IMG/VR virus record: IMGVR_UViG_3300030329_004647
Span: 124,001 to 188,000 of that record
Length of the DNA: 64,000 nt
Reading direction: 5' to 3' (one strand)
A model generated the notes under the pieces. That model was not told the DNA's origin. It worked only from the letters and a program-made list of their open reading frames with translations, and made no database searches. The stretch's first letter is position 1. Every line of letters starts with the position of its first letter. This document shows positions 9,632 to 38,322 of the stretch, piece after piece. A program made the position numbers and the translations under genes.

Positions 9632-10432
9632 TTACGCTTCTGTTGTCTGATATTTTATTGGTCTATCCTGTGTGAAAAAATATTCTTTTTTAGCTGTGTC
9701 CACCCAAAATTTTGCTTCATTAGGTGAAAGCTTGTGCTTTGGATGGTTTTTATAATCCCAAAAAAGAGAATGCTCTCTCATATTTGTGTGTTTATAACCC
9801 ACCTTAGGTACAGTCATGATTTGAATATCGTTGTATGTAGCTCTTAATAAAAACTCATAAGAAAAAGTTAATTTAATATTAGATTTTAATCCCCCGATAT
9901 CTCTAAAACTTTCTGACCTCATCACCATTCCAGATGTTTGGAAATTTTGGTAATTAAGTAAAGTATTGTTGTCTAGGTACCCCATTTTTTCTGAGAATCC
10001 CATAGCCCATAAAGCTTCATTTGTGAAACCTAAAAATTCATTAGTTTCTGATGTTTCCACTACTAACGGGAAAAATAAATCCACATCTTCATAATAGTCT
10101 ATATATTGTTGTACATTTTTAAACCATATTTTAGAGTACTCATCATCAAACTCTAAAACAGAAAACCAATCTGTTTCTATATTATCCACTCCAAAATTTA
10201 TTTGTCCACTAAATGAAGAATCACCACTATTAAATAAAACATCAACATCTAAATTTTCTGGCTTTTCCCACTCTTCGAAAAATTTTATTATATCATTTTT
10301 AGCTGCATGTACAACTAATATTTTTTTAGGTTTATCAACCTGCTCCTCTAAGCTTTTAATGCATTTGGTAAATAAATTTTTAAACTCACCTGAAACATCA
10401 TTAACTGGTATAATTACTGTAATATCATTCAT
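9632..10432 (-). CDS. Glycosyltransferase family 2-like
   Basis: ITVIIPV start, INFGV..TDWFSVLEFDD (DxD-like), YEFLLRA. Confidence 0.75.
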   Translation of the reverse strand: MNDITVIIPVNDVSGEFKNLFTKCIKSLEEQVDKPKKILVVHAAKNDIIKFFEEWEKPENLDVDVLFNSGDSSFSGQINFGVDNIETDWFSVLEFDDEYSKIWFKNVQQYIDYYEDVDLFFPLVVETSETNEFLGFTNEALWAMGFSEKMGYLDNNTLLNYQNFQTSGMVMRSESFRDIGGLKSNIKLTFSYEFLLRATYNDIQIMTVPKVGYKHTNMREHSLFWDYKNHPKHKLSPNEAKFWVDTAKKEYFFTQDRPIKYQTTEA

Positions 10433-10437
10433 TTTAT

Positions 10438-11529
10438 TTAATTTTTAGCTTCTTCCATAACTGGACTTAATTTATTAATCATCATATTGATGTCTTCTAC
10501 TTTTTGAGTTTTAATACTTTCAAAATACCCTAACAAAGAATTCTTTTCTTTTTCTTGTGAAAACATTAAAGGTGTATTGGCTGTTTCATAGTATAACTCT
10601 TCAGGTAAAGTATCCTCCAACCAATTTTTCATATAAGCACCAATCATGTCTACAATTTTTAAATATTCGAATGTCCATAATCCATTATTTTCCGTTAACC
10701 AGTCAGGCTTTAATGTTGGTGCTAATCCGATTACTGGTGTTCCACACTGCATACTTTCTAAAGGAAAAGTACCCCAACCTGAAATTCTATCTACCCAAAC
10801 TGAAACACATGATTCAGAAAGTGATTCTGAAACAGCTTTTCTTGAAATATTTCTAATATCTCTAAAAGTAACCCATCTGTATTGTGGGAATTTAATATAA
10901 AAAGATTTTATAATCTTAACTGTATCTCTAGGGTCTCTAGTATGAATAGAAATTATAGGTTTTTTAGGTTCTTCCGTTTTTTTGAAGTATTCGGGTATGG
11001 AAGGTGTTACCACTTTTATATTTAAACTATTTTCTGTATAAAATTGCTCCAAATATTCTTTTTGTGAAGTAGTAGTAGTAATACAATGGTTTATACCATA
11101 ATTACCCCAACTAAATCCTGGTTGTAAAGTATCAAATTTGTAATCATAAGATTGACATAACATAATACGCGTACAAGGCATATTATTTGTTTGTTCTAAG
11201 ATATGACCAAATTTTTCAGGTATGATTACATAATCTGCTACTCCCACAGCTAAGTCTTGTTCTATAATAGCGTGTGGTAATGAAGAATATTCTTCACCCA
11301 ACCAATCGGTAACTGGTTTGTAATCTTTTTTATCATATAAAATAAAAGCGTTGTAATTATTTTCATTTAATATTTTAACCCATTCATAATTTACAGCTAC
11401 ACTCGCCATAGCTGTACCTTGTGTGTCAGGAGTTATAAAATAAATTTTACTTTCATTTTTATTTATTTTTTCCAGAGCCTCTGTTAATAGGGCTACTTTT
11501 TCTTCTGGTGTTTTTTGTTCGTTTTCCAT
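10438..11529 (-). CDS. GT-B (GT4-like) glycosyltransferase
   Basis: IIPE motif; SGWGTFPLESMQCGTPVIG matches the GT4 EgFGlp.lEama.G.PVI pattern. Confidence 0.7.
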   Translation of the reverse strand: MENEQKTPEEKVALLTEALEKINKNESKIYFITPDTQGTAMASVAVNYEWVKILNENNYNAFILYDKKDYKPVTDWLGEEYSSLPHAIIEQDLAVGVADYVIIPEKFGHILEQTNNMPCTRIMLCQSYDYKFDTLQPGFSWGNYGINHCITTTTSQKEYLEQFYTENSLNIKVVTPSIPEYFKKTEEPKKPIISIHTRDPRDTVKIIKSFYIKFPQYRWVTFRDIRNISRKAVSESLSESCVSVWVDRISGWGTFPLESMQCGTPVIGLAPTLKPDWLTENNGLWTFEYLKIVDMIGAYMKNWLEDTLPEELYYETANTPLMFSQEKEKNSLLGYFESIKTQKVEDINMMINKLSPVMEEAKN

Positions 11530-11532
11530 GTT

Positions 11533-11826
11533 TTATGACCTTTTTAATATATTATATTCAATTAATGTGTTAAAAGCTAACCTAAATGGTATGGTAGTTT
11601 TATTTAAAGCTAAGTGTCCCATTTCATTATCCACTTCTTCACCATACCCTAAAAGAGTATCGAGTAACCCTCTAAAAAATTCCCATCTAGGTAAGTTTAT
11701 GTTATTCTTTCCATCTTCTTCTTCTACCATTACAACGTGAGACATTAAAGTATCTACATCTAGATACAGATAATCCTTCCCAATTTTTACTTGTATATCT
11801 CTTAGTTGGGGTTCTTTATTTTTCAT
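11533..11826 (-). CDS. Hypothetical protein
   Basis: 97-aa ORF coupled in operon. Confidence 0.55.
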   Translation of the reverse strand: MKNKEPQLRDIQVKIGKDYLYLDVDTLMSHVVMVEEEDGKNNINLPRWEFFRGLLDTLLGYGEEVDNEMGHLALNKTTIPFRLAFNTLIEYNILKRS

Positions 11827-12370
11827 TAGTTATAATGTTTTTAATATCTGAAAACTTATCAATCTCAAAGTCCGCCTTGATAGTTTTATTATATTCTGTT
11901 ATTAGTTTTATTGTTTTTTTATTCCCCGCGGTATTCTTTAAAATGTTAGGGTCTGCTGTAATAAAATAATCCGCCTCTTCACAAAGTACAGATAAATCTT
12001 CTAATTTGTAGAATAATATTTTATCAACACAACAACCATATTTTGCAAGAAACCATAAAGTAGCTGCTTTACCTTTTCCTAGTTCGTCAGATAACAAGGT
12101 TATTTTACTATCAGGAAAATCTTTAAAAAATTCATGTAAGAAAGAAAAACAATTTTTTTCTTTTTCCTTAGCAGCTCCAAAAATTTCCATAGAAGCTTCT
12201 ATGTATAAAAATTCTTTCAAACCATCCTCCTCCTCAAACTCAAAAAATTCTTTTAAATTCATATTAGTTATTGGTTCTACAGCCTCTTTTTTGGTGTATT
12301 TTTCATACACCTCTTTCATTTTACCGAAAGTATCTCTTAAAACGTCGTTTAGTGTTATATATATGTTCAT
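11816..12370 (-). CDS. 5'(3')-deoxyribonucleotidase-like HAD-fold protein with degenerate motif I
   Basis: IYITLNDVLRD replaces the usual DxDGVLxD; TLWFL and YNK motifs as in phage NT5C-like proteins. Confidence 0.5.
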   Translation of the reverse strand: MNIYITLNDVLRDTFGKMKEVYEKYTKKEAVEPITNMNLKEFFEFEEEDGLKEFLYIEASMEIFGAAKEKEKNCFSFLHEFFKDFPDSKITLLSDELGKGKAATLWFLAKYGCCVDKILFYKLEDLSVLCEEADYFITADPNILKNTAGNKKTIKLITEYNKTIKADFEIDKFSDIKNIITNEK

Positions 12371-13105
12371 TTATCCTATAGAGTCAAACACTCTTTCTAT
12401 TTTAGCAATTAATGGATTTCTTACTACATCCGCTTTATTAAATTGTACACAACCAATCCCATCTATGTCTTGAAAGTGGTCCATAAGAAAAGTAAGACCG
12501 TTTCCACCTTTAGAATCTTGCTGTCTTTCGTCACCTAAAAATATCATTTTAGAATCTTTACCTAGTCTAGTCATTATAGTTCTCATATTTTCTTGTGATA
12601 TGTTTTGTGCTTCATCTACAATTATAATAGACCTATCTAGATTAATTCCCCTCATATACGCTATAGGCATCTCTTCAATAGTTTTTAACTCTCTAAGTCT
12701 CTGAGTAATAGCCTGTCCCACCAATTTTTCAAAATTATGGACAAATGAAAACATAAAAGGCTCCATCTTCTCTCTTAATCCACCTTTTAAAAACCCAATT
12801 TCTTCATTTTTTAAAGTAGTCACTGATTTTACGATTACCACTTTTTTATATTTCCTGTATCGTTTTATTAACTTTAAAGCTTCTGCACACGCTAAATACG
12901 TTTTACCAGTACCAGCTGGCCCAGAACAAATAGTCACTTCATTTTCTTTTATAGAATTTACTAATTTTTTTTGATTTCCTGTTTTACATTTAACACTAAT
13001 TGTCATAGTGTCAGTCATTCTAGTTTCCTCAGTATTATTCTGATAAATCCATGCTTCGACCTCTTCTTGTTCTTCTCTACTTAATCTTTTACTTCTTTTA
13101 CTCAT
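12371..13105 (-). CDS. phoH: PhoH-family ATPase
   Basis: GPAGTGKT, IGFLKG, YMRGINL, DEAQN, TRLG, GDERQ, VVRNPL. Confidence 0.92.
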   Translation of the reverse strand: MSKRSKRLSREEQEEVEAWIYQNNTEETRMTDTMTISVKCKTGNQKKLVNSIKENEVTICSGPAGTGKTYLACAEALKLIKRYRKYKKVVIVKSVTTLKNEEIGFLKGGLREKMEPFMFSFVHNFEKLVGQAITQRLRELKTIEEMPIAYMRGINLDRSIIIVDEAQNISQENMRTIMTRLGKDSKMIFLGDERQQDSKGGNGLTFLMDHFQDIDGIGCVQFNKADVVRNPLIAKIERVFDSIG

Positions 13106-13271
13106 TTATAGTTTCTTTTTTAGTGTTTACTGTTATTACGCAAGGTATAGTCTCAATTCGTTCCATAAATTTACCGTAGATTACTTCAAATCTCTCATGT
13201 CTACTTACTAAACTAAAGGGAACCATTGGTTCTCCATGACCATAACTTACCATGTCCCATAATTCATACAT
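13098..13271 (-). CDS. Small hypothetical protein (57 aa, not in ORF track)
   Basis: MYELWDMVSYGHGEPMVPF...KETINE*; ATG overlaps the ugd stop and the end overlaps the phoH start. Confidence 0.55.
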   Translation of the reverse strand: MYELWDMVSYGHGEPMVPFSLVSRHERFEVIYGKFMERIETIPCVITVNTKKETINE

Positions 13272-14149
13272 TATATTTCATTTTTTTCAAGGTTATTAAT
13301 TATTGCTCTACCTTCCATTTTTTCCCAATCCTTGTTAGTCCTAACCATTGTATTAGTGTTATGTGTAGCATCTAACATAGGTGTTTTTATTAAAAGTTTA
13401 TTAGCTTCATGTCTTAACGCTAATAAATCTTTAGGAAAACAATGACCACCAAACCCAAAGTCACCATCTGGCCCAGGAACATTCCAATGTGAGTAACCTA
13501 AACGTTCATCTAATTTAGCATACTCAATTACTTTATCGTAATCAACACCTAACCCTTTACAAACATTATACATTTCATTTGCAAAAGACACTTTAGTAGC
13601 TAAAAAAGTATTAGTTAGATATTTTACCATTTCTGCATATGTAGAATCTGTTTTTACTACATGTACTTTTGGAAAAGCTTTAGAAAAAATAGGTTTAACT
13701 TTAGCGGTAACCTCATTAGGACCACCTAGAATTATTCGGTTTTGATTTTTATAGTCTTCTATTGAATTCGCTTCAGTTAGAAATTCTGGATTATATACTA
13801 AAGATACTCTATTAAATCCTTTTTGTAGTTTTTTAGTAGTTCCAGGGGGTATAGTAGATTTAAGAACAATTGTTCTAGTTTCGTTTCCATAATAATCTTT
13901 AATATCACAATAGTTATTTATTTCACTTAAAACCTCTTCCACAATACCAGTATAACACTTACCCTCATTATCCATAGGTGTTGGTAGACATAAAAAAATT
14001 ATTTTACACCTCTCAACAATATCAACTAGTGTGTTAGTACTAAATTCTGGTTTGTTTAAATCAAAAGTTAATATATTAAAATATTTTTGAAGACCTTCTT
14101 TAACAGCGGTTCCTACAAAACCCTGTCCAACTATTCCTATTTTATCCAT
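13271..14149 (-). CDS. ugd: UDP-glucose/GDP-mannose 6-dehydrogenase family protein (short form)
   Basis: GQGFVG, CLPTP, KSTIPPG, NPEFL, catalytic GFGGHCFPKD; lacks C-terminal UDP-binding domain. Confidence 0.85.
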   Translation of the reverse strand: MDKIGIVGQGFVGTAVKEGLQKYFNILTFDLNKPEFSTNTLVDIVERCKIIFLCLPTPMDNEGKCYTGIVEEVLSEINNYCDIKDYYGNETRTIVLKSTIPPGTTKKLQKGFNRVSLVYNPEFLTEANSIEDYKNQNRIILGGPNEVTAKVKPIFSKAFPKVHVVKTDSTYAEMVKYLTNTFLATKVSFANEMYNVCKGLGVDYDKVIEYAKLDERLGYSHWNVPGPDGDFGFGGHCFPKDLLALRHEANKLLIKTPMLDATHNTNTMVRTNKDWEKMEGRAIINNLEKNEI

Positions 14150-15005
14150 TTTTAATTTGTTCTATATAATTTTTTAAATTTATCTTAGGTTCCCAACCCA
14201 ACTTTTTAGTGTTAGTATTATCTAATATAACAGAAGATAAACGTTCACCCCTTCTTTCAGGAACCAAAACCCAGTTATCAGTAAACATAGAAGCAACATC
14301 TGCTAATTTCCAGTTTTTACCAGTACCTAACATATATTCACTATTAAAACCTTTTTCTATTGTCATAATAATACCATTAATGATATCGTCAATATGTGTA
14401 AAGTCACGTGACTGTGTTCCTGGGGAAACCACTGTTAATGGCTCACCTTTTTTATACTGTCCCTCAAAAATTCCTATTACCGCTTTATAATCACCTTCCA
14501 TAATTTGTTTAGGACCATATACGTTGTAAAAATAAACTATTTCATATTTTAGAGAATACCATTCACCAAAATTTTTAATTAATTCTACATTTTTAGCTTT
14601 AGTCCAAGAATACGGGGATAAATTTTCATCCTTACCATCATTACCAAACTTACTACTAGATGCTGAATAAATTAATTTAACGTTATTTTTATGACAAAAA
14701 TTAACTATTTTCATAGTACCGTAACCATTAGATTTTAAAACATAATCTATATCTTTAAAAGAATTAACAATTCTAGAGTACTCACCAAAATGAAAAATTA
14801 TATCAATATCGGGTTTAACCAATTCATCAATATCCCAAGTATTTCCCTTAATATAATTTACTCGTTTGTCGTTTATGTGGTTTTTAATGTTACCAGTAAA
14901 ATAATTGTCTAAAGAAGTTATATTGATATTTTTATAACGTGATAATAATTCTTCTATAAGTGAAGACCCAATAAATCCTGCTCCACCAGTTACTAATATT
15001 TTCAT
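14142..15005 (-). CDS. NAD-dependent epimerase/dehydratase
   Basis: TGGAGFIGS, YSWTK (YxxxK), YNVYGP, RDFTHIDD. Confidence 0.85.
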   Translation of the reverse strand: MKILVTGGAGFIGSSLIEELLSRYKNINITSLDNYFTGNIKNHINDKRVNYIKGNTWDIDELVKPDIDIIFHFGEYSRIVNSFKDIDYVLKSNGYGTMKIVNFCHKNNVKLIYSASSSKFGNDGKDENLSPYSWTKAKNVELIKNFGEWYSLKYEIVYFYNVYGPKQIMEGDYKAVIGIFEGQYKKGEPLTVVSPGTQSRDFTHIDDIINGIIMTIEKGFNSEYMLGTGKNWKLADVASMFTDNWVLVPERRGERLSSVILDNTNTKKLGWEPKINLKNYIEQIKNG

Positions 15006-16166
15006 TTATTTATCTATTCTTTTTATGATATCACAAACAAATTTAATATCATCATATGTTAAATTTGGATGATTAGGTAAATATAAAGCTTTATTATCTA
15101 TAATTTCAGCATTTGGAAGTGTTAACTCACCGTAAAGTTTAGAGTAAAATGGTTGTTTGCCCATAGAACCACAAATAAGTGGTCTAACCTCTACCCCATT
15201 AGACTCCAATTCCTCAACCAACTTATTTCTATTATTAGAAACATATGGAAAAGCAAAATTAGAGACAAAATAGTCACCAGATTGTTGTGGAAAATATGAT
15301 AAGTCTCCTAATAGTTCATGGTAAATACTGTAATTTTTATGTCTTAACCTAACAGTTTCGTCTAACTTATCAAGTTGTCCTAATCCTATATAAGCTTGTA
15401 AATCAGTTGCTCTCATATTAAATCCAGGCACATAAAAAGTGTATAACCCATTAAAATTACTAACCTCCCACTCATCTCTTAATTTTTTAGTTGAGGTGTC
15501 ACACAAATCTCTATCCCAACCATGACTTCTTAACATGAGAATTAAATCATAAATTTCTTTTTCATTTGTACAAATTAATCCACCTTCAATCGTTGACATG
15601 TGATGACCAAAGTATGTTGAAAAAGTAGACATCAAGCCAAAATTTCCCAAAGTCTTGTCTTGGAATTTAGACCCTAAACTTTCACACACATCTTCTAATA
15701 GTGAAACGTTATATTTTTCACACAAACTTACTATTTTATCCATTTCAGGAACTAATCCTAAAACAGAAACTAATATAAGAGCTTTAGGACTGTCCTTTTT
15801 AAAAATCTCCTCCAAATGATTAAGGTCGACCGATAGATTTTTTAAATCTACATCACATAAAACAGGTTTCAAACCTAATTGTATTACAGGTGATAAATCT
15901 GTAGCCCAAGATAAAGAAGGGACAACCACCTTATCTCCTATGTTTAATAGTCCTTTTTGTACTAGAACATATAACATAATTAAATTTGCTGAGGAACCAG
16001 AGTTGACAAATACACAATGTTTACAACCGAGCCATTTTGCAAATAATTTTTCGAATTCAACAGTCAGTGTATTTTTAGTTAACCTAGGATAAGTTTTTAA
16101 CCATTCTATTAATCTATCAATATCTTTATTGTCGATAGTATCTTTTACTAATTCTATTTTATTCAT
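15006..16166 (-). CDS. colD: GDP-4-keto-6-deoxy-D-mannose 3-dehydratase (ColD-like, DegT/PLP family)
   Basis: VNSGSSANL, EDVCESLG, STYFGHHMSTIEGG (His in place of PLP Lys), RSHGWDRD; adjacent to fcl/gmd. Confidence 0.75.
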   Translation of the reverse strand: MNKIELVKDTIDNKDIDRLIEWLKTYPRLTKNTLTVEFEKLFAKWLGCKHCVFVNSGSSANLIMLYVLVQKGLLNIGDKVVVPSLSWATDLSPVIQLGLKPVLCDVDLKNLSVDLNHLEEIFKKDSPKALILVSVLGLVPEMDKIVSLCEKYNVSLLEDVCESLGSKFQDKTLGNFGLMSTFSTYFGHHMSTIEGGLICTNEKEIYDLILMLRSHGWDRDLCDTSTKKLRDEWEVSNFNGLYTFYVPGFNMRATDLQAYIGLGQLDKLDETVRLRHKNYSIYHELLGDLSYFPQQSGDYFVSNFAFPYVSNNRNKLVEELESNGVEVRPLICGSMGKQPFYSKLYGELTLPNAEIIDNKALYLPNHPNLTYDDIKFVCDIIKRIDK

Positions 16167-18039: not shown

Positions 18040-18041
18040 AA

Positions 18042-20876: not shown

Positions 20877-20877
20877 T

Positions 20878-21213
20878 TTAATTACCTTTATACGCTCTAA
20901 TTGAATTTATTTTATTTTCAGAATCAAATGTGATAATATCCGTCACTAATAATGTGTCAGTTTCATTTATAACTACTTCTATTTCACAAGCAACAGTATT
21001 GTCTTCTTGAAACATTTTACTTGGTCTAACTTCCACAGACTCAACCGCTTCAAAAATTTGTTCATTTGATTTTATAACATTATCTAATCCTTTTGAATTA
21101 ACCTCCCAATCACGTAAATAACAATCTTCTGAAAGAAGTTTTCTTAATCCATCTAAATCTTGATTGGAAAAAGTTTTAAAGTAGGTTAAACATATATTTT
21201 TTAAATTGTCCAT
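20878..21213 (-). CDS. SnoaL/NTF2-like protein
   Basis: YFKTFSNQDLDGLRKLLSEDC...IITFDSENKINSIRAY. Confidence 0.75.
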   Translation of the reverse strand: MDNLKNICLTYFKTFSNQDLDGLRKLLSEDCYLRDWEVNSKGLDNVIKSNEQIFEAVESVEVRPSKMFQEDNTVACEIEVVINETDTLLVTDIITFDSENKINSIRAYKGN

Positions 21214-24451: not shown

Positions 24452-24452
24452 T

Positions 24453-25808: not shown

Positions 25809-25820
25809 TCCTTTTAATTT

Positions 25821-29197: not shown

Positions 29198-29198
29198 T

Positions 29199-30595: not shown

Positions 30596-30597
30596 AA

Positions 30598-31410: not shown

Positions 31411-32204
31411 TTTAAAATAAATTTAATTTCTTGATGAGGACCATTAACGTCAGTAAAATCCATATTAACAAAATCTAGTCTTTTTCCATTAATATATTCC
31501 CTCACTAATTCTTTTTCACTGTAACTTATTTTTTTACCATAAGGATTGTTAAAAACGTCGTTAACTTTATTAACAGGAATACTAACCAACTTACTCTCTT
31601 CGAATGAATGCATAAATCTTTCACCAATTATAGGTAAAAAATGCTGTAAATTAGCTTCTAGTGTGTTGGGTGATGTAAAGGGACACCTTTCTAATATTTT
31701 TAGTATAAATTCTTTTTTAAATATATGGCCATCAACAGATAGTGGATAGGCAAAATCAACTTCATTTTCATCCCATCTCCATTTTAAAACACCATTGTTA
31801 TTACTTACATTTTTAGTTTCATAACTTTTAGAAGCGGGATGAGAATAGTTACAATTTAATCCTAGTCTTAGGGAAAAACAGGCTGCGTCATCATCTATAT
31901 TAATTTTATTAAACTGAAGTGTTTTAAAAATAACACTATCATCTGTCATGAAAGAAAATAACTTAAATTTTTGTTTTCTAACAAACGATAATACTTGATT
32001 GTAAAAATCCTCTTCTTCTATATTAAAATTAACATCTGGATGTTCTTTTATGAGTGTCTTGTACGCGGATTCATAATGAGGTGCTGTTGTTTTATATATA
32101 ATATTTATGTTAAAAAAATTGGGCATATTAAGATATATAGAGTTTAACAACCCATCTAATTGTAATGGTCTATTTTTAGAAAATATAACTAATTCACACC
32201 TCAT
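31407..32204 (-). CDS. GT-A-like putative glycosyltransferase
   Basis: IFSKNRPLQL, FMTDD, FSLRLG, YPLSVDGHIF. Confidence 0.5.
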   Translation of the reverse strand: MRCELVIFSKNRPLQLDGLLNSIYLNMPNFFNINIIYKTTAPHYESAYKTLIKEHPDVNFNIEEEDFYNQVLSFVRKQKFKLFSFMTDDSVIFKTLQFNKINIDDDAACFSLRLGLNCNYSHPASKSYETKNVSNNNGVLKWRWDENEVDFAYPLSVDGHIFKKEFILKILERCPFTSPNTLEANLQHFLPIIGERFMHSFEESKLVSIPVNKVNDVFNNPYGKKISYSEKELVREYINGKRLDFVNMDFTDVNGPHQEIKFILK

Positions 32205-32815
32205 TTTAATAAATTATCATAGTTTACAACTCTTCCTTGTATATCTGAATAACCTTCTCTTTGAAAAGCAATAGAGGGGTTAGTACAATATACATTAAAA
32301 CTTTTTTGAATCATTGTATAGTAGTTATCTACTTGTTTTTTATGTTTAGGTAATATGCTTTCTATTACGTCATACACCGTTGATTTTACAGCGACACAAT
32401 GAATCGCTACTGTATAGTGTAATTTTAATGTTGTCTCATTTATAACTTGGGGTGGTGAACCGTATCTATGATTACCACCAAAATAAATCATATCCCAATC
32501 ATCGGGAATGTTATTCATAAATTTATCTAAATTTTTTAATTCAGGCCCAAAAACCACATCATCCTCCAACATTAGATAATGGGGTAAATTATTTTCTTTA
32601 GCGTGACGCACTAAAGATAAGTTACTCTCCAATATACCTAATTCTCCTGGGAGTATAAATTTAGGTTTTTCTAACTTACTACCATCTACAGCTGAAAATC
32701 GTTCAACATCTTTTAATCCCACTCTATCAAACTCTGAACAAGCTTCTTCCCACCTATCCTTTCTTTGGTCCAAATTAATACAAAATATGTCTTTAAAATA
32801 TTTGTTAAAACTCAT
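32201..32815 (-). CDS. GT25 glycosyltransferase
   Basis: CINLDQRKDRW, RFSAVDG, GELG, MLEDD, DWDMIYFG, QREGYSDI. Confidence 0.85.
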   Translation of the reverse strand: MSFNKYFKDIFCINLDQRKDRWEEACSEFDRVGLKDVERFSAVDGSKLEKPKFILPGELGILESNLSLVRHAKENNLPHYLMLEDDVVFGPELKNLDKFMNNIPDDWDMIYFGGNHRYGSPPQVINETTLKLHYTVAIHCVAVKSTVYDVIESILPKHKKQVDNYYTMIQKSFNVYCTNPSIAFQREGYSDIQGRVVNYDNLLK

Positions 32816-34464
32816 AATAGTTCTTCGTATGTTTTTATAATTTCATTTATTGTGTATGTCGAACGGAATTTTTCCATATCTCCAGGTACCTCATTATATG
32901 TTATATCTAGAATATTACCACTTTCATCGACATTGTAAATCCATCCTGGTCTATTACATAGCCAACCCTCGATAGTTGTTCTACCTAATAATATACCAGC
33001 CGTCTCATGACACTCCTTTATATAGTTTTCTACAGACCAAGTAGGTTCAAAATATTTAACATGTGGTTCATTAATTTTATCTAAATAGTCCGCTCTCTTT
33101 TTACCCACAATCCATAATTCTTTATTGTCAGATTTAGTTTTCTCAATTAAATCTTCTATAGTCAATTGTCTTAACCAATCTATAGTACCCACGAATAAAA
33201 TTCTAGGCTTTATATTTTTTTGTAATGGATAGTGTTTAAATCTTGTTTCATCAAAAGGATTATAAATGGTAACCGTTTTATCCTCTGAGATGTTAAACCT
33301 ATCTTCGATATATTTTTTAATTTCAGGACGAATACATATATATTTTTTAATTCTTTCATCTAATACCGGTTGTTCTAATTCTAAAACTTCAGAATGTATG
33401 GTACAGAGTATAGATGATGCTTGGGGATATAGATTTAACATTCCTTCTGTTATTGGTTTGTGATGTAAGTGAAGAACGTCAAACTTAACATCTTTTACTT
33501 TATAAAGCTGTCCCTCTACTGTTTGTATTTGTCCTTGAGCTGTGTTAAGCACTGTTTTACCATCTCCTTTAAAAAATCCTGGAGGTTCATTTATAGACCA
33601 TAATGTTACACCATAGGTTTTTATTTTTTTAGATATACTACCTCCTATATTTGAACAGATGTGTACGTCATGTCCCTCTTGAGCTAAACCTTTAGCTAGC
33701 TCGTAAACATGTAACTCAGAACCCGTATAATCGTTAAAATTTAAACAAGCTATTAATATCTTTAGTTTTTCACCTTTCCATAATTTACGATTCATAAAAA
33801 CAGGTAAATTGGTAGAATACTTCTCAACGAACAATTGTCTAGCCTCTTCCCATTTATCATTAGTAGCACCAATTGAAAGGTGTGTAATTTTAATATTAGA
33901 GTGTACCCCTATTTTAACACCATCCATATAATTAGGAAAACAAAACCCCACATCATAAAAGTGAAAATTGGTAAAACTCTCATCAAACTTATGTTTTATA
34001 CTATTTTTTTTAATAGAGAAAAATAATCCGTCTACTAATACAACGTCATCAATTCTATTTCCTATATCTTTAGAATATCTACTTAACCATCTTTTACCTT
34101 CATGTTCGTGATAAACAGCACCATGCATTTTTGAAAAGTCATCCCACCATCGTCCACTAGAAGGCATATATCTCGTTCCCGCTACACCTAAAATTCCATA
34201 GTCTTTATTTTTTTTATGATGATTTAAAACCCTTCTACCCCAATTACGAGTATCAAACTTTATGTCGTCATGACAAAATACCACAATATCGTTTGTGGCT
34301 TTAGAAAGTCCGATGTTAAAAGCTTCAGATAATGAATATTTGCCATCGTTTTCTATAGGAATAACTTCTACCTTGTGTACACCACAAGTTGATTTTATTA
34401 GTTCTACAAAGTAGGGGTCTACTTTTTTTGTAGAAAACACTACTGATAAATTTTTAAAGTTCAT
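32812..34464 (-). CDS. Bifunctional glycosyltransferase (GT-A Glyco_tranf_2_5-like + GT-B)
   Basis: N-terminal FCHDDI, GVAG, VDGLF, FHFYD; C-terminal TGSELHVYELAKGL, IYNPFD, GRTTIEGW. Confidence 0.75.
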   Translation of the reverse strand: MNFKNLSVVFSTKKVDPYFVELIKSTCGVHKVEVIPIENDGKYSLSEAFNIGLSKATNDIVVFCHDDIKFDTRNWGRRVLNHHKKNKDYGILGVAGTRYMPSSGRWWDDFSKMHGAVYHEHEGKRWLSRYSKDIGNRIDDVVLVDGLFFSIKKNSIKHKFDESFTNFHFYDVGFCFPNYMDGVKIGVHSNIKITHLSIGATNDKWEEARQLFVEKYSTNLPVFMNRKLWKGEKLKILIACLNFNDYTGSELHVYELAKGLAQEGHDVHICSNIGGSISKKIKTYGVTLWSINEPPGFFKGDGKTVLNTAQGQIQTVEGQLYKVKDVKFDVLHLHHKPITEGMLNLYPQASSILCTIHSEVLELEQPVLDERIKKYICIRPEIKKYIEDRFNISEDKTVTIYNPFDETRFKHYPLQKNIKPRILFVGTIDWLRQLTIEDLIEKTKSDNKELWIVGKKRADYLDKINEPHVKYFEPTWSVENYIKECHETAGILLGRTTIEGWLCNRPGWIYNVDESGNILDITYNEVPGDMEKFRSTYTINEIIKTYEELL

Positions 34465-35449
34465 ATTTTTTTATATAGTATTTTATAGTTTCGTTAATAC
34501 TGTCCTCAAAAGAGTAAACAGGCCACCAACCTAAATCCGTTGTAATTTTATCATGATTAATTGAGTATCTAAAATCATGCCCCGCTCTATCCTTTACAAA
34601 ACTTATTAAATTTTGGGAGTCAACATTACCCGTGAGTTCATCGAAATTTTTACACATAAAAGTGATTAAATCTATGTTCGATAGTTCCATGTCACCCCCT
34701 ATATTATATTTTTGTCCTGAAGTTCCATTATGAAAGACACTATCTAATGCTCTACAATGGTCATCCACATACAACCAATCTCTTATATTTTTACCATCAC
34801 CATAAACAGGTATTTCTGTTCTATTATAAAGATTTTTTATAACGGTTGGTATTAGTTTTTCTTCATGTTGTCTAGGACCAAAATTATTAGAACAATTAGT
34901 CATAACAACATCCAAACCAAAAGTATGAAAATATGATAGTACAAAGTGGTCAGATGACGCTTTAGACGCGGAATAAGGTGACCTAGGAAGGTATAATGAG
35001 TTTTCATGTGAAGATGGTGAATCCATGTCTAATGACCCATAAACCTCATCAGTAGAAATATGTAAAAATCTTTTAGTTTTATATTTTAAAGCTAAGTTTA
35101 ATAAATTTAATGTCCCTATAACATTAGTTTCCGCGAATATAGTAGGATTTTCAATAGAATTGTCTACATGACTTTCAGCTGCTAGATGAAAAATTCCATG
35201 AGGATTAAACTCTTTGAAGATTTCCTCAAGTTTACTTTTATCCCTAATATCACATTTTACAAAATGGTAATTAGGATGATTCTCAACATCATTTAAATTA
35301 TTTAAATCAGCAGCATAAGTTATAGAATCTACATTTACGATTAAATAATCTTTATACTTTTCAAGAAGGTGAATTATTAAATTAGAACCGATGAATCCCA
35401 ATCCTCCAGTCACTAATATAATCTTATTATTATTTAATGGTATTAACAT
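34454..35449 (-). CDS. rmlB: dTDP-glucose 4,6-dehydratase
   Basis: TGGLGFIGSN, HLAAESHVDNSI, STDEVYG, PYSASKA, NNFGPRQHEEKLIP, DRAGHDFRY. Confidence 0.93.
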   Translation of the reverse strand: MLIPLNNNKIILVTGGLGFIGSNLIIHLLEKYKDYLIVNVDSITYAADLNNLNDVENHPNYHFVKCDIRDKSKLEEIFKEFNPHGIFHLAAESHVDNSIENPTIFAETNVIGTLNLLNLALKYKTKRFLHISTDEVYGSLDMDSPSSHENSLYLPRSPYSASKASSDHFVLSYFHTFGLDVVMTNCSNNFGPRQHEEKLIPTVIKNLYNRTEIPVYGDGKNIRDWLYVDDHCRALDSVFHNGTSGQKYNIGGDMELSNIDLITFMCKNFDELTGNVDSQNLISFVKDRAGHDFRYSINHDKITTDLGWWPVYSFEDSINETIKYYIKKYEL

Positions 35450-35452
35450 AAA

Positions 35453-36088
35453 TTATAGTTTACCTGTGGAACCAAATCCTTTATCACTCCTAGATGTTCC
35501 ATCCAAATTATCTACTTTACGTAAATTAATCCATCTAGGACTAAGAACATAATTTATCACCGCTTGTGCAATTCTTTCACCAGGTTTTAAAGTGTACTCC
35601 TCATTAGATAAGTTTATTAAAATTACTTTTATCTCACCTCTATATCCATTATCTACAGTTCCTGGTGTATTTAAAACACTTATTCCATGTTTAAGGGTTA
35701 AACCACTTCTGGGTCTTACTTGTATTTCATAATCTTGGGGTAACTGGAAAAAAACCCCAGTAGGTACTAAAGTTCTTTCCATAGGACCAAGAGTTAATGG
35801 AGACTCTATATTTGCTCGTAAATCCATTCCACTATCAGTATCATATTGATAGTGAGGGTCATCAAAAGTTGATGTATTAACAAATTTTATATCAAATTTT
35901 TGTTGTACTCCAGACGAAAAATCCTTAGTTAAATTATCTATAGATTCTGTATCTAAACCAAATTGAGCTCCAATCTCAGCAACTGTAGGAACTTCTTCTG
36001 ATGATTCTTCAGAATACCCTTTTAATTTTTCTAATGTAGATTTTAAGGATTTATTTTGGAATAAATTTTCTGGTGTTAGTTTTTTCAT
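35453..36088 (-). CDS. dut: dUTPase (trimeric) with N-terminal extension
   Basis: SGMDL, QVRPRSGL, PGTVDNGYRGEI, ERIAQ, RSDKGFGSTG. Confidence 0.93.
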   Translation of the reverse strand: MKKLTPENLFQNKSLKSTLEKLKGYSEESSEEVPTVAEIGAQFGLDTESIDNLTKDFSSGVQQKFDIKFVNTSTFDDPHYQYDTDSGMDLRANIESPLTLGPMERTLVPTGVFFQLPQDYEIQVRPRSGLTLKHGISVLNTPGTVDNGYRGEIKVILINLSNEEYTLKPGERIAQAVINYVLSPRWINLRKVDNLDGTSRSDKGFGSTGKL

Positions 36089-36786
36089 TATAAAGTTTTA
36101 ATTTTTTGTATTAATTTTATTGTGGATTTTACATCCTCTTCACAATAATTTTTTATTTTATCCTTATCACTATTATTATAGTAATAATTGTGCATATTTG
36201 AACCATTAACCTCATTATCTTTTGGATTGTCTATTCCCATGGTTGCACATATTAATTCTAAAGAAGACAACCCTTTAAATGAATTAAAATTCCAAACCTC
36301 CTTGGTGTCTAAAACTTTTGACTCCCAAGGTTTGATTTTATAATTAGGAATAATATTAGGGACTTTTATGTTATTAATTAACATTCTTTTAGCGATATAC
36401 GGTAAATCAAAATTTTTAATATTATGACCACAAATATTAAAATTTAAATTATCTACTCTGTCAAAAAGAGAGGATGTTTTTTGTAATATATCTTTCTCAT
36501 TACCCATAAAAGTATCTAATTTAATTTCACCATCTGCCATTAAAAAACCAACAGACACACATACTATCTTCCCAAACTCAGGAATTAAAGCTGCTCTTTT
36601 TGTGAATAATTGATTACTAGATAAATTAGAATCTTCAGGATAACGTCTTTTAAAGTAATCTACGCCTGTAGACTCCCACACTTTAAAGAGATGGGGATAT
36701 TCAGAATGTAAAGAATCTAAATCCTCCTCAATTCCTACCGTCTCTATATCAATAAATAAAAGTTTTGTTATGTCTTCTTTAATCAT
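36088..36786 (-). CDS. PolB-related DEDD 3'-5' exonuclease
   Basis: FIDIETV, FGKIVCVS, GHNIKNFDLPY, YCEEDV; start refined to MIKED. Confidence 0.8.
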   Translation of the reverse strand: MIKEDITKLLFIDIETVGIEEDLDSLHSEYPHLFKVWESTGVDYFKRRYPEDSNLSSNQLFTKRAALIPEFGKIVCVSVGFLMADGEIKLDTFMGNEKDILQKTSSLFDRVDNLNFNICGHNIKNFDLPYIAKRMLINNIKVPNIIPNYKIKPWESKVLDTKEVWNFNSFKGLSSLELICATMGIDNPKDNEVNGSNMHNYYYNNSDKDKIKNYCEEDVKSTIKLIQKIKTL

Positions 36787-36794
36787 TTTTATTT

Positions 36795-36833
36795 TAAAGA
36801 TAAAAAAAATCGACCTATAATCCAAGTCGATTT
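36795..36833 (-). promoter_or_regulatory. TTG-N20-TATCTTTA promoter overlapping an intrinsic terminator hairpin
   Basis: Minus-strand TTG 36825-36823, TATCTTTA 36802-36795; inverted repeat AAATCGAC (36807-36814)/GTCGATTT (36826-36833) with minus-strand U-tract. Confidence 0.55.
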
Positions 36834-36857
36834 AATTTTTTTATCATTTAAAATTGA

Positions 36858-37085
36858 TTAATAATATTTAGGAGTCAATTTAGGGTGTAAAATATCTTCA
36901 TAAGGTGCTTTTACTAAAGAAACTATTTCTGAATCTCTAGCATCTTCACTTAGATACTTACTTAATCTTTGAGTTGCTTCATACACAGACTCGGATTCTA
37001 CCACATATTTAAATTTTTTGACCTTTGGATTTCCCTGGTTGTCAATTACACCAGTTTCAAATGCTACGATTGCTTGATAGTACAT
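36858..37085 (-). CDS. DUF4494-like small protein (Bacteroidota-associated)
   Basis: YYQAIVAFE...GNPKVKKFKYVVESESVYEA...EIVSL resembles DUF4494. Confidence 0.5.
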   Translation of the reverse strand: MYYQAIVAFETGVIDNQGNPKVKKFKYVVESESVYEATQRLSKYLSEDARDSEIVSLVKAPYEDILHPKLTPKYY

Positions 37086-37089
37086 ATTT

Positions 37090-38322
37090 TTACGCTTTTT
37101 TAATTAATTCTTTATATATCTGTGCTCTAGTTTTACACACATTATCCATATGGTATTTTTGCACATCCTCATAGAGTTTTTCACCCAAGTCCTTTACCAT
37201 GTTAGGGTTATCTATAAGTCTTTTTATGTGTTGATACCACTGTTTGTGATTTTTTCTAGTTTCTACCATGAGACAATTTCCTTTAGAATTTAGTTTACCA
37301 CCATATTCTACTGCATTAACACAATCTATTTGGTAAGGACCGTAGTCTTGTGCAATTAATGCCTTTTTATGAAAACCAGCTTCAATAACTTTTAATTGTG
37401 ATTTTACATAGTTAAAGACATGTTCTTTAATAGGTGCTAGTGATACATCAAATAAGTTATAGTTAGAAGCATAAGTAGTAATAGGTTTAGTCCATACTCT
37501 TCTATATGGTAACTCTTCTTCCCCTTTATACTTACCTTTTTTAAATGACTGTAACCAATCACCATATTCTTTTGATACTATTTTATAATTCTCAGTAAAT
37601 ATCTTTTCGTAAGTATACCAAATAGACTCATGAGGCTCTATATCTCTAGTGGTTTGTTGTCCTGTTTGTTGGTTCATTTCCGTAATTTTACCTCTAAGGT
37701 CATAACCACACAATACAAATTGAAATTTTCCAGTACAACTTGTACTTAATCTTCCAGGCATCCCACTTAGAATTTCTAAATCTTTTAAGTGAGAAGAACC
37801 ACCTAACCAACCTATTCTAACCACATCAGAATCTACTGGTTTAGGTTGAAACTGTCGTTCATTAGGGTTTACAGCGTTAGGTAAAATAAAAATTTCACCA
37901 CCGAAAGTCTTCATTTCATTAGCATAAATTTGTGTTGTAGTACTAATATACTCTGTTTCTTTAAGGTGAGCTTTAATATTTTTATCTAATTGGTGCTGCT
38001 TAACTATCGCGTGTGCTGGATGGTCTATAGTAGGTAACCAATAGTCGTCTATATCCATAATAGCTGGTATACCTAACTTTTTTATTTTCTTTAACGCTTT
38101 TAACGAAACTTCATGATTAGGGCTTAAATGTCTATGAAAATGAATTAAATCATATCCTGTTAAATAACTTTCATCATCTAATTTAGGTTCATAATCAACA
38201 TCAACCCAGAAATCTTCGGGATATAATTCTTGTAAACGTATATGAGGGTCTACTGACCTAAACTTACTAACCCCAGTTCTATCACTAGGTATAACTAAAA
38301 TTTTGTATTTCGAATTGTCCAT
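37090..38322 (-). CDS. GT-B glycosyltransferase
   Basis: GVSKFRS, DIDDYW, LPNA, RIGWLGGSSH, LAPI...FNYVKSQLKVIEAG. Confidence 0.78.
   Translation of the reverse strand: MDNSKYKILVIPSDRTGVSKFRSVDPHIRLQELYPEDFWVDVDYEPKLDDESYLTGYDLIHFHRHLSPNHEVSLKALKKIKKLGIPAIMDIDDYWLPTIDHPAHAIVKQHQLDKNIKAHLKETEYISTTTQIYANEMKTFGGEIFILPNAVNPNERQFQPKPVDSDVVRIGWLGGSSHLKDLEILSGMPGRLSTSCTGKFQFVLCGYDLRGKITEMNQQTGQQTTRDIEPHESIWYTYEKIFTENYKIVSKEYGDWLQSFKKGKYKGEEELPYRRVWTKPITTYASNYNLFDVSLAPIKEHVFNYVKSQLKVIEAGFHKKALIAQDYGPYQIDCVNAVEYGGKLNSKGNCLMVETRKNHKQWYQHIKRLIDNPNMVKDLGEKLYEDVQKYHMDNVCKTRAQIYKELIKKA

What the first reader, a model, noticed from the sequence alone, without database searches (positions are those of the whole stretch)
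9632..38322. ~29 kb phage-encoded glycan biosynthesis block without export machinery: candidate virion glycosylation system
Seen: more than 30 tightly coupled minus-strand genes, with about 13 glycosyltransferase-like ORFs (GT2, GT4, GT10 x2, GT25 x2, GT14-like, a GT-A/GT-B fusion) plus Gmd, Fcl, ColD, RfbH, RmlB, Ugd, an epimerase, PMI cupin, HADs and two nucleotidyltransferase fusions. I see no Wzx/Wzy/ABC exporter, no initiating polyprenyl-phosphate transferase and no obvious TM anchors. Known: bacterial surface glycan loci need those exporters, while some giant viruses and a few phages glycosylate their own virions in the cytoplasm. Inference: the phage builds a complex, variable oligosaccharide on cytoplasmic acceptors (virion proteins), perhaps for adsorption, stability or shielding.
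Basis: partly seen in the sequence, partly recalled or inferred. Interest (0 to 1): 0.9.

Follow-up and report, generated by a model that had tools for sequence, protein, structure and literature searches.

The report
Phage sugar-chain factory without exporters
A large uncultured marine T4-like phage carries about 35 back-to-back genes that make unusual activated sugars and join them into a complex sugar chain using only soluble enzymes; similar but smaller clusters are known in marine phages, and what the chain is attached to (phage particle, host surface or DNA) is still unproven.

Summary
Window 9632-38322 carries 35 minus-strand genes, and 30 of 34 junctions overlap or are 5 bp or less apart. 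Eleven to twelve genes are glycosyltransferases (GTs). Enzymes are present for GDP-fucose, GDP-colitose and a 3,6-dideoxyhexose, plus sugar-1-phosphate activation. No integral-membrane protein, flippase, polymerase, ABC exporter or initiating phosphotransferase is present.

The window is part of a 232-kb T4-like jumbo phage that recurs in Tara Oceans assemblies. The new result concerns architecture. In eight relatives the same slot is bounded by four conserved soluble GTs. The genes between them are almost completely different, and again none is a membrane protein.

Comparable "LPS-like" clusters are already described in cultured marine T4-like phages (P-SSM2, S-SCSM1, ACG-2014f) and in pelagimyophages. 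So this is a large new member of a known kind, not a new kind.

I rate lipid-independent glycosylation of phage virion proteins at about 0.4. Remodelling of host envelope glycolipid through host exporters is about 0.3. DNA glycosylation by the whole block is below 0.1. Glycoproteomics of virions would decide.

The parts
38328..38356 (-). Perfect sigma-70-type promoter (TTGACA-17-TATAAT) directly upstream of the conserved GT-B gene
   Evidence: It matches 12 of 12 consensus positions. The -35 and -10 hexamers are conserved upstream of the orthologue in L003-L006 and L008.
37090..38322 (-). Conserved left-flank glycosyltransferase with a GT-B fold, GT4-like
   Evidence: It hits phrog_7162 at E 5e-34. 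It is 49-60% identical in all 8 related loci. The AF2 model (pLDDT 61) matches GT4-type GT-B enzymes by Foldseek: GlgM, MshA, BshA, GtfC/Gtf3, SdgB and the chlorovirus NY2A GT. More than 7600 homologues were found, the listed ones mostly from Tara and other ENA/JGI metagenome records.
36807..37076 (-). Small DUF4494-like ORF (36863-37076) followed by an intrinsic terminator (36807-36833). Together they close the promoter-GT transcription unit.
   Evidence: The terminator has an 11-bp stem followed by a T-run. DUF4494 is a weak Pfam hit, and a matching ORF sits at the same position in L014.
35453..36825 (-). PolB-exonuclease/RNaseH-like gene (36088-36825) and dUTPase-like gene (35453-36088). 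These are nucleotide-metabolism genes inside the block, not glycan genes; the dUTPase-like gene is conserved in all relatives.
   Evidence: Pfam hits. The dUTPase-like gene is 41-55% identical in relatives.
34454..35449 (-). dTDP-glucose 4,6-dehydratase (RmlB)
   Evidence: TIGR01181 scores 416 bits, above the 365-bit equivalog cut-off.
32812..34464 (-). Two-domain GT. The N-terminal GT-A domain (Glyco_tranf_2_5) is conserved in all relatives. The C-terminal GT4-type GT-B domain is present only here and in L002.
   Evidence: Pfam E 3.6e-30 and 1.9e-12. The N-terminal ~345 aa are 46-55% identical in relatives. One exact metatranscriptome contig covers 33537-33856 (weak).
28280..32815 (-). Run of six GTs: GT25 (32201-32815), GT-A-like (31407-32204), GT10 fucosyltransferase-like (30598-31410), weak GT2-like (29918-30595), GT25 (29199-29927) and GT10 (28280-29197)
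   Evidence: Pfam hits. The two GT10 genes and the two GT25 genes are paralogue pairs. The Atlas structure match for 31407-32204 has TM 0.89-0.93. 29918-30595 has only a weak GT2 motif.
21201..28217 (-). Sugar activation and deoxysugar genes, in order: HAD (beta-phosphoglucomutase-like) + sugar-1-P nucleotidyltransferase fusion (26850-28217); cupin (26530-26850); unknown 242 aa (25821-26549); RfbH/E1-like 3-dehydrase (24453-25808); small HAD (24083-24451); PMI-type cupin (23739-24086); nucleotidyltransferase + APH-like kinase fusion (22157-23752); GatZ/KbaZ-like class II aldolase-fold protein (21201-22193)
   Evidence: Pfam and NCBIfam hits. Atlas match for 21201-22193. 25821-26549 remains unassigned.
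18042..21213 (-). SnoaL-like protein (20878-21213), GT6-like GT-A (20082-20876), GT-A/GT2-like GT (19112-20092), and a two-part protein with an N-terminal GDSH (SGNH-type) motif and a C-terminal phrog_34507 domain (18042-19115)
   Evidence: Pfam, (SnoaL). The AF2 model of 20082-20876 has pLDDT 95, and its top 50 PDB matches are all GT6. Atlas match for 19112-20092. PHROG hit and sequence reading for 18042-19115.
13271..18039 (-). GDP-sugar cassette: Gmd (17065-18039), Fcl-like (16163-17086), ColD (15006-16166), SDR that is a ColC candidate (14142-15005), and a nucleotide-sugar dehydrogenase lacking its C-terminal domain (13271-14149)
   Evidence: NCBIfam hits. ColD: best PDB hit is 2gms at E 2e-67, with the His188-equivalent residue present. 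The Ugd-like protein keeps its GxGxxG and GGHCFPKD motifs. The same Gmd-Fcl-ColD order occurs in cyanophage ACG-2014f at 48/34/39% identity.
9632..13271 (-). Conserved right flank: 57-aa ORF, PhoH (12371-13105), HAD/NT5C-like 184 aa (11816-12370), 97-aa protein (11533-11826), Agt/AmGGT-like GT-B (10438-11529) and GT2 (9632-10432)
   Evidence: Pfam hits. These genes occur in the same order in L013 and L015, at 22-49% identity. For 10438-11529, the PDB profile search hits 8xsg at E 1.1e-16 and the single-sequence search at 2e-10.

Best explanation
The block is a virus-encoded, entirely cytoplasmic glycan assembly line.

Shown:
- It encodes enzymes for GDP-L-fucose and GDP-L-colitose (Gmd, Fcl-like, ColD, SDR).
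- It encodes enzymes for a 4-keto-6-deoxy / 3,6-dideoxy hexose (RmlB, RfbH-like).
- It encodes hexose-1-phosphate activation (two nucleotidyltransferase fusions, a PMI cupin and HADs).
- It encodes 11-12 soluble GTs of both folds.
- It sits in a fixed genomic slot of a marine T4-like jumbo phage lineage.
- Four GTs are conserved at the edges: GT-B 37090, GT-A 32812 N-terminal domain, Agt-like GT-B 10438, and GT2 9632.
- The interior is replaced wholesale between relatives.

Inferred:
- The four conserved GTs start and build a conserved inner glycan on an acceptor shared by the whole lineage.
- The variable interior genes add a lineage-specific outer part rich in fucose and deoxysugars, by sequential transfer without a lipid carrier.
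- The acceptor is most likely one or more of the phage's own virion proteins, glycosylated in the cytoplasm before or during assembly. The glycan coat would leave the cell with the particle, so no exporter is needed.
- The coat would affect adsorption, stability or recognition of the particle.
For: Enzyme identities.

GT folds.

No membrane proteins: none in the window block, and none among the plus-strand ORFs of ten related loci. No exporter or phosphotransferase family appears in the precomputed Pfam annotation of three other islands.

Same slot, conserved flanks, different interior. Interiors elsewhere contain GT11 (two to four copies), GT17, FkbM methyltransferases, Epimerase_2 and others.

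Conserved flank GTs imply a conserved acceptor (inference).

The closest solved relative of one conserved GT is AmGGT, of the Agt family. Agt elongates glucose on cytoplasmically N-glycosylated proteins (PMC12159676).

The 264-aa product of 20082-20876 is indexed in 57 blocks of the collection; in the 24 contigs read, the neighbouring gene set was mostly the same (21 similar places collapsed), and the three loci shown (Tara Oceans) have the same gene order. So it is a fixed trait of this phage and not assembly noise.

Precedents: giant viruses carry clade-specific clusters that glycosylate virion fibrils or capsids (PMC10117803, PMC9614988). Mycobacteriophage capsid and tail-tube glycosylation is cited in PMC12619734. 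Bacterial flagellin, adhesin and serine-rich-repeat protein glycosylation islands also lack exporters (own knowledge).
Against: No acceptor was identified, and nothing computed here distinguishes a protein from a lipid-linked acceptor.

The GT families present (GT10, GT25, GT6-like; GT11 in relatives) and the sugars (fucose, colitose, dideoxyhexose) are typical of bacterial LPS/LOS. There, soluble GTs work on lipid-linked acceptors that host transporters export.

No initiating protein glycosyltransferase of a known type (NGT/GT41, for example) was found in the window.

AmGGT itself prefers oligosaccharides over glycopeptides (PMC12159676).

The conserved GT-B 37090 has a conserved strong sigma-70 promoter, so it is probably an early gene. 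That would also suit DNA or host-directed functions.

Only about 90 kb of the 232-kb genome was inspected, so membrane components could lie elsewhere.
Confidence: 0.4

Rival explanations
1. Host-envelope remodelling. The soluble phage GTs act at the inner face of the host membrane on lipid A-core (LOS) or undecaprenyl-linked units. Host MsbA/Lpt or Wzx/Wzy/WaaL then export the altered glycan. This changes the infected cell's surface so as to block superinfection, stop progeny adsorbing to debris, or deter grazers.
For: GT10, GT25 and GT6-like enzymes, colitose and dideoxyhexoses are hallmarks of LPS/LOS (family knowledge). This is the explanation offered in the literature for the homologous clusters of P-SSM2 (PMC1079782), pelagimyophages (PMC7029224) and S-SCSM1 (PMC9602691). 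LOS extension needs no dedicated exporter (established knowledge). Between-lineage variability would track host surface diversity.
Against: Characterised phage seroconversion systems use membrane proteins (GtrABC, Oac, Wzy variants; own knowledge), and none is present here or in the related loci examined. Four GTs are conserved across relatives whose other proteins have diverged to 25-60% identity. That fits a phage-encoded acceptor better than hypervariable host glycans. Wzx and Wzy are usually specific for their own repeat unit (established knowledge). The host is unknown.
Confidence: 0.3
2. Glycosylation of non-virion proteins in the cytoplasm. Possible targets are host surface or secreted proteins (flagellin, pilin, adhesins, receptors) or phage non-structural proteins, modified to alter receptor availability or protect them from proteolysis.
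For: This uses the same evidence for a lipid-independent, soluble pathway. One conserved GT is homologous to the Agt family.
Against: No candidate target is known. A 29-kb investment conserved in slot across a lineage is hard to justify for a host-specific protein target. There is no precedent in phages.
Confidence: 0.1
3. DNA hypermodification. Some or all of the GTs glycosylate modified bases in phage DNA to evade restriction or CRISPR systems. The most credible partial form is that only the early, conserved GT-B 37090 next to the dUTPase-like gene does so.
For: GT-B 37090 has a conserved consensus sigma-70 promoter, as T4 early genes do, and lies beside nucleotide-metabolism genes and near PolB. 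Phage DNA glycans are diverse (bioRxiv 10.1101/2023.12.21.572611).
Against: No hydroxymethylase, C5-methyltransferase, TET/5mYOX or thymidylate-synthase-like gene was found in the roughly 90 kb inspected. Known DNA glycans reach at most about three hexoses and need one or two GTs next to such enzymes (same preprint), not 11-12 GTs with fucosyl- and galactosyltransferase families that extend glycans. The phage already has a Mom-family DNA-modification gene. Foldseek did not place 37090 near the T4 alpha/beta-GTs among its top 50 hits.
Confidence: 0.07

Closest known systems
'LPS-like' or cell-wall gene clusters of marine T4-like phages (Prochlorococcus phage P-SSM2; Synechococcus phages S-SCSM1 and ACG-2014f; the pelagimyophage host-recognition island)
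   Same: The virion and replication core is T4-like (Gp23, Portal_T4, gp13, sheath). Nucleotide-sugar dehydratases and epimerases cluster with several GTs in a variable region. A Gmd-Fcl-ColD-like cassette in the same order occurs in ACG-2014f at 48/34/39% identity. Fucosyltransferases are prominent. The function is untested in every case (PMC1079782, PMC9602691, PMC7029224).
   Different: This phage belongs to a different, uncultured jumbo lineage; the PolB is only about 23% identical to any cultured phage, and megablast found no match. The cluster is larger, at about 29 kb with 11-12 GTs. It has a defined architecture of four conserved flanking GTs around an interchangeable core, in one fixed slot between the capsid and replication modules.
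Giant-virus virion glycosylation clusters (Megavirinae fibril glycans; chlorovirus capsid glycans)
   Same: The virus encodes both nucleotide-sugar pathways and soluble GTs. Gene sets are clade-specific and replace one another between relatives. Rare 'bacterial' sugars are made, and no lipid-carrier or export genes are present (PMC10117803, PMC9614988). Atlas neighbours of 19112-20092 include Nucleocytoviricota clusters.
   Different: Those viruses are eukaryotic, and the glycans were shown chemically on their virions. Here nothing has been shown chemically, and the host is a bacterium with its own LPS machinery.
Mycobacteriophage virion glycosylation
   Same: Phage-encoded soluble GTs modify capsid and tail-tube subunits in the cytoplasm (as cited in PMC12619734).
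   Different: By my recollection (primary paper not held), those phages carry only a few GT genes and no nucleotide-sugar pathways, and they are siphoviruses of actinobacteria. No sequence relationship was tested because no reference sequence was at hand.
NGT/Agt cytoplasmic protein N-glycosylation (Actinobacillus, Haemophilus) and AmGGT (PDB 8XSG)
   Same: The conserved GT-B 10438-11529 is specifically related to AmGGT/Agt. The profile E-value is 1e-16, against 0.02 for the next PDB hit. These are soluble, retaining, metal-independent GT-B enzymes that extend a sugar already on a protein or an oligosaccharide (PMC12159676).
   Different: Identity is roughly a quarter by eye over the 255 aligned residues, not computed. 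No NGT (GT41) partner was found in the window. Acceptor-specificity residues were not compared.
Bacterial O-antigen / capsule loci
   Same: Both contain nucleotide-sugar genes plus GT2, GT4, GT10, GT25 and GT6-type transferases, and both show conserved flanks around a variable centre.
   Different: Here there is no initiating phosphoglycosyltransferase, no Wzx/Wzy or ABC transporter, no chain-length regulator and no membrane protein at all.

Membership tests
Marine T4-like phage 'LPS-like' auxiliary glycan clusters | T4-like structural and replication core in the same genome | tested here: met
   Gp23, Portal_T4, Peptidase_S77, gp13, a weak gp19-like hit, tail sheath and PolB are present.
Marine T4-like phage 'LPS-like' auxiliary glycan clusters | Cluster of nucleotide-sugar dehydratases/epimerases with several GTs in a region that varies between relatives | tested here: met
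   Gene content. Variation across L002-L009 and L013-L015. A cassette is shared with cyanophage ACG-2014f.
Virus-encoded virion glycosylation (giant viruses, mycobacteriophages) | Soluble virus-encoded GTs, with or without sugar-nucleotide genes, and no lipid-carrier or export step | tested here: met
   Hydropathy and family scans.
Virus-encoded virion glycosylation (giant viruses, mycobacteriophages) | Glycan chemically attached to virion structural proteins | not testable with these tools
   This needs purified virions and glycoproteomics. The phage is uncultured.
Bacterial Wzx/Wzy- or ABC-dependent O-antigen/capsule locus | Initiating polyprenyl-phosphate sugar transferase (WecA/WbaP type) | tested here: not met
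   No such Pfam or NCBIfam hit, and no transmembrane segment in any ORF of the block.
Bacterial Wzx/Wzy- or ABC-dependent O-antigen/capsule locus | Flippase plus polymerase, or ABC exporter | tested here: not met
   No multi-TM ORF in the block or in the ten related loci examined. None appears in the Pfam context of L013-L015.
Phage seroconversion modules (GtrABC, O-acetyltransferase, Wzy variants) | Membrane-embedded modifying enzymes acting at or across the inner membrane | tested here: not met
   No integral-membrane ORF was found.
Phage DNA glycosylation systems (T4 alpha/beta-GT; C5-MT/5mYOX/GT clusters) | An enzyme making a hydroxymethylated base (dCMP/dUMP hydroxymethylase, or C5-methyltransferase plus TET/5mYOX) associated with the GT | tested here: not met
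   None was found in the window or about 26 kb of flanking genome. The rest of the 232-kb genome was not seen.
Phage DNA glycosylation systems (T4 alpha/beta-GT; C5-MT/5mYOX/GT clusters) | One to three GTs giving mono- to trisaccharides | tested here: not met
   There are 11-12 GT genes here. The comparison is with bioRxiv 10.1101/2023.12.21.572611.
NGT/Agt cytoplasmic N-glycosylation | Agt-type elongating GT-B | tested here: met
   10438-11529 against 8xsg: profile E 1.1e-16, single-sequence E 2e-10.
NGT/Agt cytoplasmic N-glycosylation | HMW1C/NGT (GT41) initiating enzyme | tested here: not met
   No ORF of the block has a GT41 or HMW1C-type hit.

The most novel reading that the evidence does not exclude
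A widespread lineage of marine T4-like jumbo phages coats its own virions with a two-tier glycan. A conserved inner part is built by four lineage-core soluble GTs. A lineage-specific, fucose- and deoxysugar-rich outer part is built by an interchangeable gene island. This would be a bacteriophage counterpart of giant-virus autonomous glycosylation and a 'serotype' system for phage particles.
Probability: 0.35. Interest if true: 0.8.

Novelty: new member of a known kind. Interest (0 to 1): 0.55.

Why it matters
Glycan gene clusters in marine T4-like phages have been catalogued for twenty years and routinely labelled 'LPS modification' without a test. This lineage recurs across Tara Oceans assemblies and is common in public metagenome collections: the conserved GT has more than 7600 homologues in the searched collection. 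It also offers a clean design, with four conserved soluble GTs framing a swappable island and no membrane component.

That design turns the open question of the acceptor into specific experiments. If virions are the target, phage particles carry strain-specific glycan coats. That would affect adsorption, decay, grazing and aggregation of a large part of the ocean virome. It would also extend virus-autonomous glycosylation from giant viruses to bacteriophages.

If the host envelope is the target, a lytic phage rewrites host surface antigens using host exporters. Either way the enzymes are a source of soluble fucosyl-, galactosyl- and deoxysugar transferases.

Tried and rejected
- Megablast of 24 kb of the block against cultured phages found no match.
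- Single-sequence PDB searches of unknown ORFs gave nothing usable. A profile of the GT6-like ORF also found nothing by sequence; only the structure prediction resolved it.
- The profile of the conserved GT-A domain matched only an uncharacterised structural-genomics GT-A, weakly.
- The first AF2 model of GT 37090 was of low confidence (pLDDT 61). I use it only for fold class.
- Host inference from the phage Fe/Mn superoxide dismutase failed. The best bacterial hits are 48% identity or less and spread over Bacteroidota, Bacillota and Planctomycetota.
- A T4-type late-promoter motif (TATAAATA) did not mark the structural genes, so it gave no timing information for the island.
- The 735-kb megaphage that shares the GT-B homologue shows no synteny with the block.
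- Cultured phages hold no homologue of the Agt-like GT or the GT6-like GT.
- Metatranscriptome evidence is two short exact contigs, and DNA carry-over cannot be excluded.
- ORF 25821-26549 stays unassigned.
- A link to the 'moraphages', whose core genome includes four GT orthogroups (PMC12619734), could not be tested because their sequences are not in the collections. The conserved sigma-70-type promoter argues against the Bacteroidota host predicted for that group.
- I rejected the idea that the block is a mis-binned bacterial O-antigen locus. It is flanked on both sides by phage genes on the same contigs in many independent assemblies.

Full report
**What is there.** The window is phage DNA. 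It carries a 1361-aa tail sheath, a family B DNA polymerase, an SNF2-type helicase, a gp13 neck protein and a gp55-like late sigma factor. Just outside it lie the Gp23 capsid protein, T4-type portal, prohead protease and terminase. It belongs to a 232-kb IMG/VR contig. The same sequence recurs in many Tara Oceans assemblies. G+C is about 31% throughout, with no sharp break at the block. No cultured phage is close: megablast finds nothing, and the best PolB hit is 23% identical.

**Checking the observation: layout and glycosyltransferases (GTs).** From 9632 to 38322 there are 35 genes, all on the minus strand. Thirty of 34 junctions overlap or are separated by 5 bp or less.

- Family models identify GT2, two GT10, two GT25, a GT-A + GT-B fusion and a PHROG glycosyltransferase.
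- Four ORFs with no family-model hit above threshold (one only a weak GT1 hit) were resolved by structure or profile.
  - 19112-20092 and 31407-32204 have GT-A folds.
  - 20082-20876 gave a pLDDT-95 model whose 50 best PDB matches are all family GT6, namely the ABO transferases, alpha-1,3-GalT and Bacteroides BoGT6a.
  - 10438-11529 is related to the AmGGT/Agt GT-B family.
- One more ORF, 29918-30595, has only a GT2-type N-terminal motif.
Its 'GT14-like' call was not reproduced.

**Checking the observation: sugar-nucleotide enzymes.**

- RmlB scores above the equivalog cut-off. Gmd, an Fcl-like SDR and an RfbH-like dehydrase are present.
- A ColD is present whose best PDB match is E. coli ColD (E 2e-67). 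It has histidine at the position of ColD His188, where aminotransferases have lysine.
- Also present are an SDR that could be ColC, a nucleotide-sugar dehydrogenase that keeps its catalytic cysteine motif but lacks the C-terminal domain, a PMI-type cupin and two HADs.
- There are two fusions: HAD-nucleotidyltransferase and nucleotidyltransferase-kinase.
- 21201-22193 is not a GT. It is a GatZ/KbaZ-like aldolase-fold protein of a family common in phages.
- 25821-26549 remains unknown.

**Checking the observation: absences and extras.** No ORF in the block hits a flippase, polymerase, ABC transporter or polyprenyl-phosphate transferase family. No GT has a hydrophobic segment of transmembrane strength. 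The block also contains genes unrelated to glycans: PhoH, a dUTPase-like gene, a PolB-exonuclease-like gene and a DUF4494-like gene.

**Comparative result.** Eight related viral contigs were found (PolB 75-78% identical where covered). Three Pfam-annotated contexts show the same slot.

- One side is conserved: a 921-aa protein, small genes including a WYL protein, GT-B 37090 (49-60% identity), the dUTPase-like gene, and the GT-A domain of 32812 (46-55%).
- The other side is conserved: PhoH, a 184-aa HAD-like protein, a 97-aa protein, the Agt-like GT-B (38-49%), the GT2 (34-46%), and the sigma-like gene.
- Between them the content is almost entirely different from phage to phage.
  - One relative has two GT11 fucosyltransferases (one only a faint hit), three FkbM methyltransferases and Gmd/Fcl.
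  - Another has four GT11, a GT17, GT2s, methyltransferases, several SDRs and a fuller Ugd.
  - A third has GT2s, a UDP-GlcNAc 2-epimerase, a nucleotidyltransferase and a RuBisCO-large-like protein.
- The interior runs from about 11 kb in L013 to about 21 kb in the window.
- None of the 232 non-overlapping plus-strand ORFs in ten such loci has more than a marginal hydrophobic segment.
- Within this phage species the block is stable. The gene order is the same in the loci shown from different ocean samples, and 21 further contigs were collapsed as having mostly the same neighbouring genes.

**Regulatory detail.** GT-B 37090 is preceded by a perfect TTGACA-17-TATAAT promoter in its 45-bp upstream gap. 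Both hexamers are conserved in five relatives. The GT and a small DUF4494-like gene are followed by a strong intrinsic terminator. This GT is therefore probably transcribed by unmodified host RNA polymerase, that is, early. That timing is inference. Two exact contigs from one marine metatranscriptome fall inside two of the GT genes, but DNA carry-over cannot be excluded.

**How it most likely works.**

- Shown: the block has the capacity to make GDP-fucose, GDP-colitose, a 3,6-dideoxyhexose precursor and activated hexoses. It has a dozen soluble transferases, several of which belong to families that extend existing glycans (fucosyl- and galactosyl-type enzymes).
- Inferred: the four conserved GTs act on an acceptor common to the lineage and lay down an inner glycan. 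The island enzymes decorate it in a lineage-specific way. The chemistry is sequential and independent of a lipid carrier.

**Weighing the acceptor.**

- In favour of a protein, and most simply a virion protein:
  - Membrane steps are completely absent in every island examined.
  - The flanking GTs are conserved while everything else changes.
  - One conserved GT is specifically related to the Agt family of the cytoplasmic protein N-glycosylation pathway (PMC12159676).
  - There are precedents in giant viruses, whose glycan clusters are also clade-specific (PMC10117803, PMC9614988), and in mycobacteriophages (cited in PMC12619734).
- Against:
  - Nothing identifies an acceptor.
  - The GT families and sugars are those of LPS/LOS. 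LOS extension by soluble GTs needs only the host's own MsbA/Lpt.
  - The literature on homologous clusters favours host-surface change (PMC1079782, PMC7029224, PMC9602691).
- DNA glycosylation by the whole block is unlikely.
  - No base-hydroxymethylating enzyme lies in the roughly 90 kb inspected.
  - Known DNA glycans need one or two GTs and reach about three hexoses.
  - The phage already encodes a Mom-family DNA-modification protein.
  - A DNA role for the early GT-B alone cannot be excluded.
- My estimates are: virion proteins 0.4, host envelope 0.3, other proteins 0.1, DNA 0.07, and the remainder unknown.

**Comparison with what is known.** The closest kind is the 'LPS-like' cluster of marine T4-like phages.

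- P-SSM2 has 24 such genes (PMC1079782).
- S-SCSM1 has 13, including Gmd, Fcl and three fucosyltransferases (PMC9602691).
- Pelagimyophages have GT-rich hypervariable islands (PMC7029224).
- Cyanophage ACG-2014f has a Gmd-Fcl-ColD-like cassette in the same order as here, followed by GTs, a methyltransferase and a sulfotransferase.

The present block is a larger example in a different, uncultured lineage. Its framed-island architecture is clearer than I have seen described in the papers read. It is not a bacterial O-antigen or capsule locus, a seroconversion module or a known DNA-glycosylation cluster, because defining features of each were tested and not met.

**Verdict.** Novelty is moderate: a new member of a known kind. 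The value lies in an experimentally tractable design for an old open question.

Noticed in passing
window 62819-63445 (-): A full-length Mom-family protein (Pfam PF25680, E 2e-27) sits in the tail-gene region. It suggests Mu-Mom-like DNA base modification in a marine T4-like jumbo phage.
   Followed up: partly
window 38328-38356 (-) and 36807-36833 (-): A perfect consensus sigma-70 promoter, conserved in relatives, and a strong intrinsic terminator bracket a two-gene unit. The canonical -35/-10 hexamers argue for a host with a standard sigma-70, and against a Bacteroidota host.
   Followed up: partly
window 21201-23752 (-): A GatZ/KbaZ-like aldolase-fold protein of a phage-wide family lies next to a nucleotidyltransferase + APH-like kinase fusion (phrog_4098). 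Together they could form an undescribed route to an activated ketose or rare sugar.
   Followed up: partly
window 18042-19115 (-): A two-part protein has an N-terminal GDSH (SGNH hydrolase/acyltransferase-type) motif. By eye, its C-terminal half shows HRG...EN...E.D...HD motifs like glycerophosphodiester phosphodiesterases; Pfam did not confirm this. It may add or remove acyl or glycerophosphate groups on the glycan. A relative has a 49%-identical C-terminal domain alone (L015 15787-16221).
   Followed up: partly
window 13271-14149 (-): A nucleotide-sugar dehydrogenase keeps its Rossmann motif and catalytic cysteine but lacks the whole C-terminal domain (292 aa). The same 292-aa gene is called in other Tara contigs, and a relative has a 365-aa version. 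It may be a decaying remnant or a minimal enzyme.
   Followed up: partly
window 52037-52690 (-): A phage-encoded Fe/Mn superoxide dismutase. The best bacterial relatives are 48% identical or less and are taxonomically scattered.
   Followed up: partly
window 56856-60941 (+): The tail sheath protein is 1361 aa, but only the last ~300 residues match sheath families. About 1060 N-terminal residues are unexplained and could be exposed decoration domains.
   Followed up: no
window 41072-43837 (+): A 921-aa protein rich in Cys, Gly, Ser and Thr has no family hit. It is divergently transcribed from the block and has a T4-late-type TATAAATA motif 39 nt upstream. Its length varies from 642 to 1049 aa in relatives. 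It may be a structural or fibre protein, and a candidate glycan acceptor or binder.
   Followed up: no
L015 13974-15149 (+): A RuBisCO-large-subunit-like protein is encoded inside the glycan island of a related phage, next to an FkbM methyltransferase. It is probably a RuBisCO-like enolase/isomerase acting on a sugar phosphate.
   Followed up: no
window 6429-8534 (-): A 701-aa protein downstream of the conserved GT pair has one strongly hydrophobic segment near residue 477. The segment is conserved in position in a relative that is only 24% identical. Function unknown.
   Followed up: no
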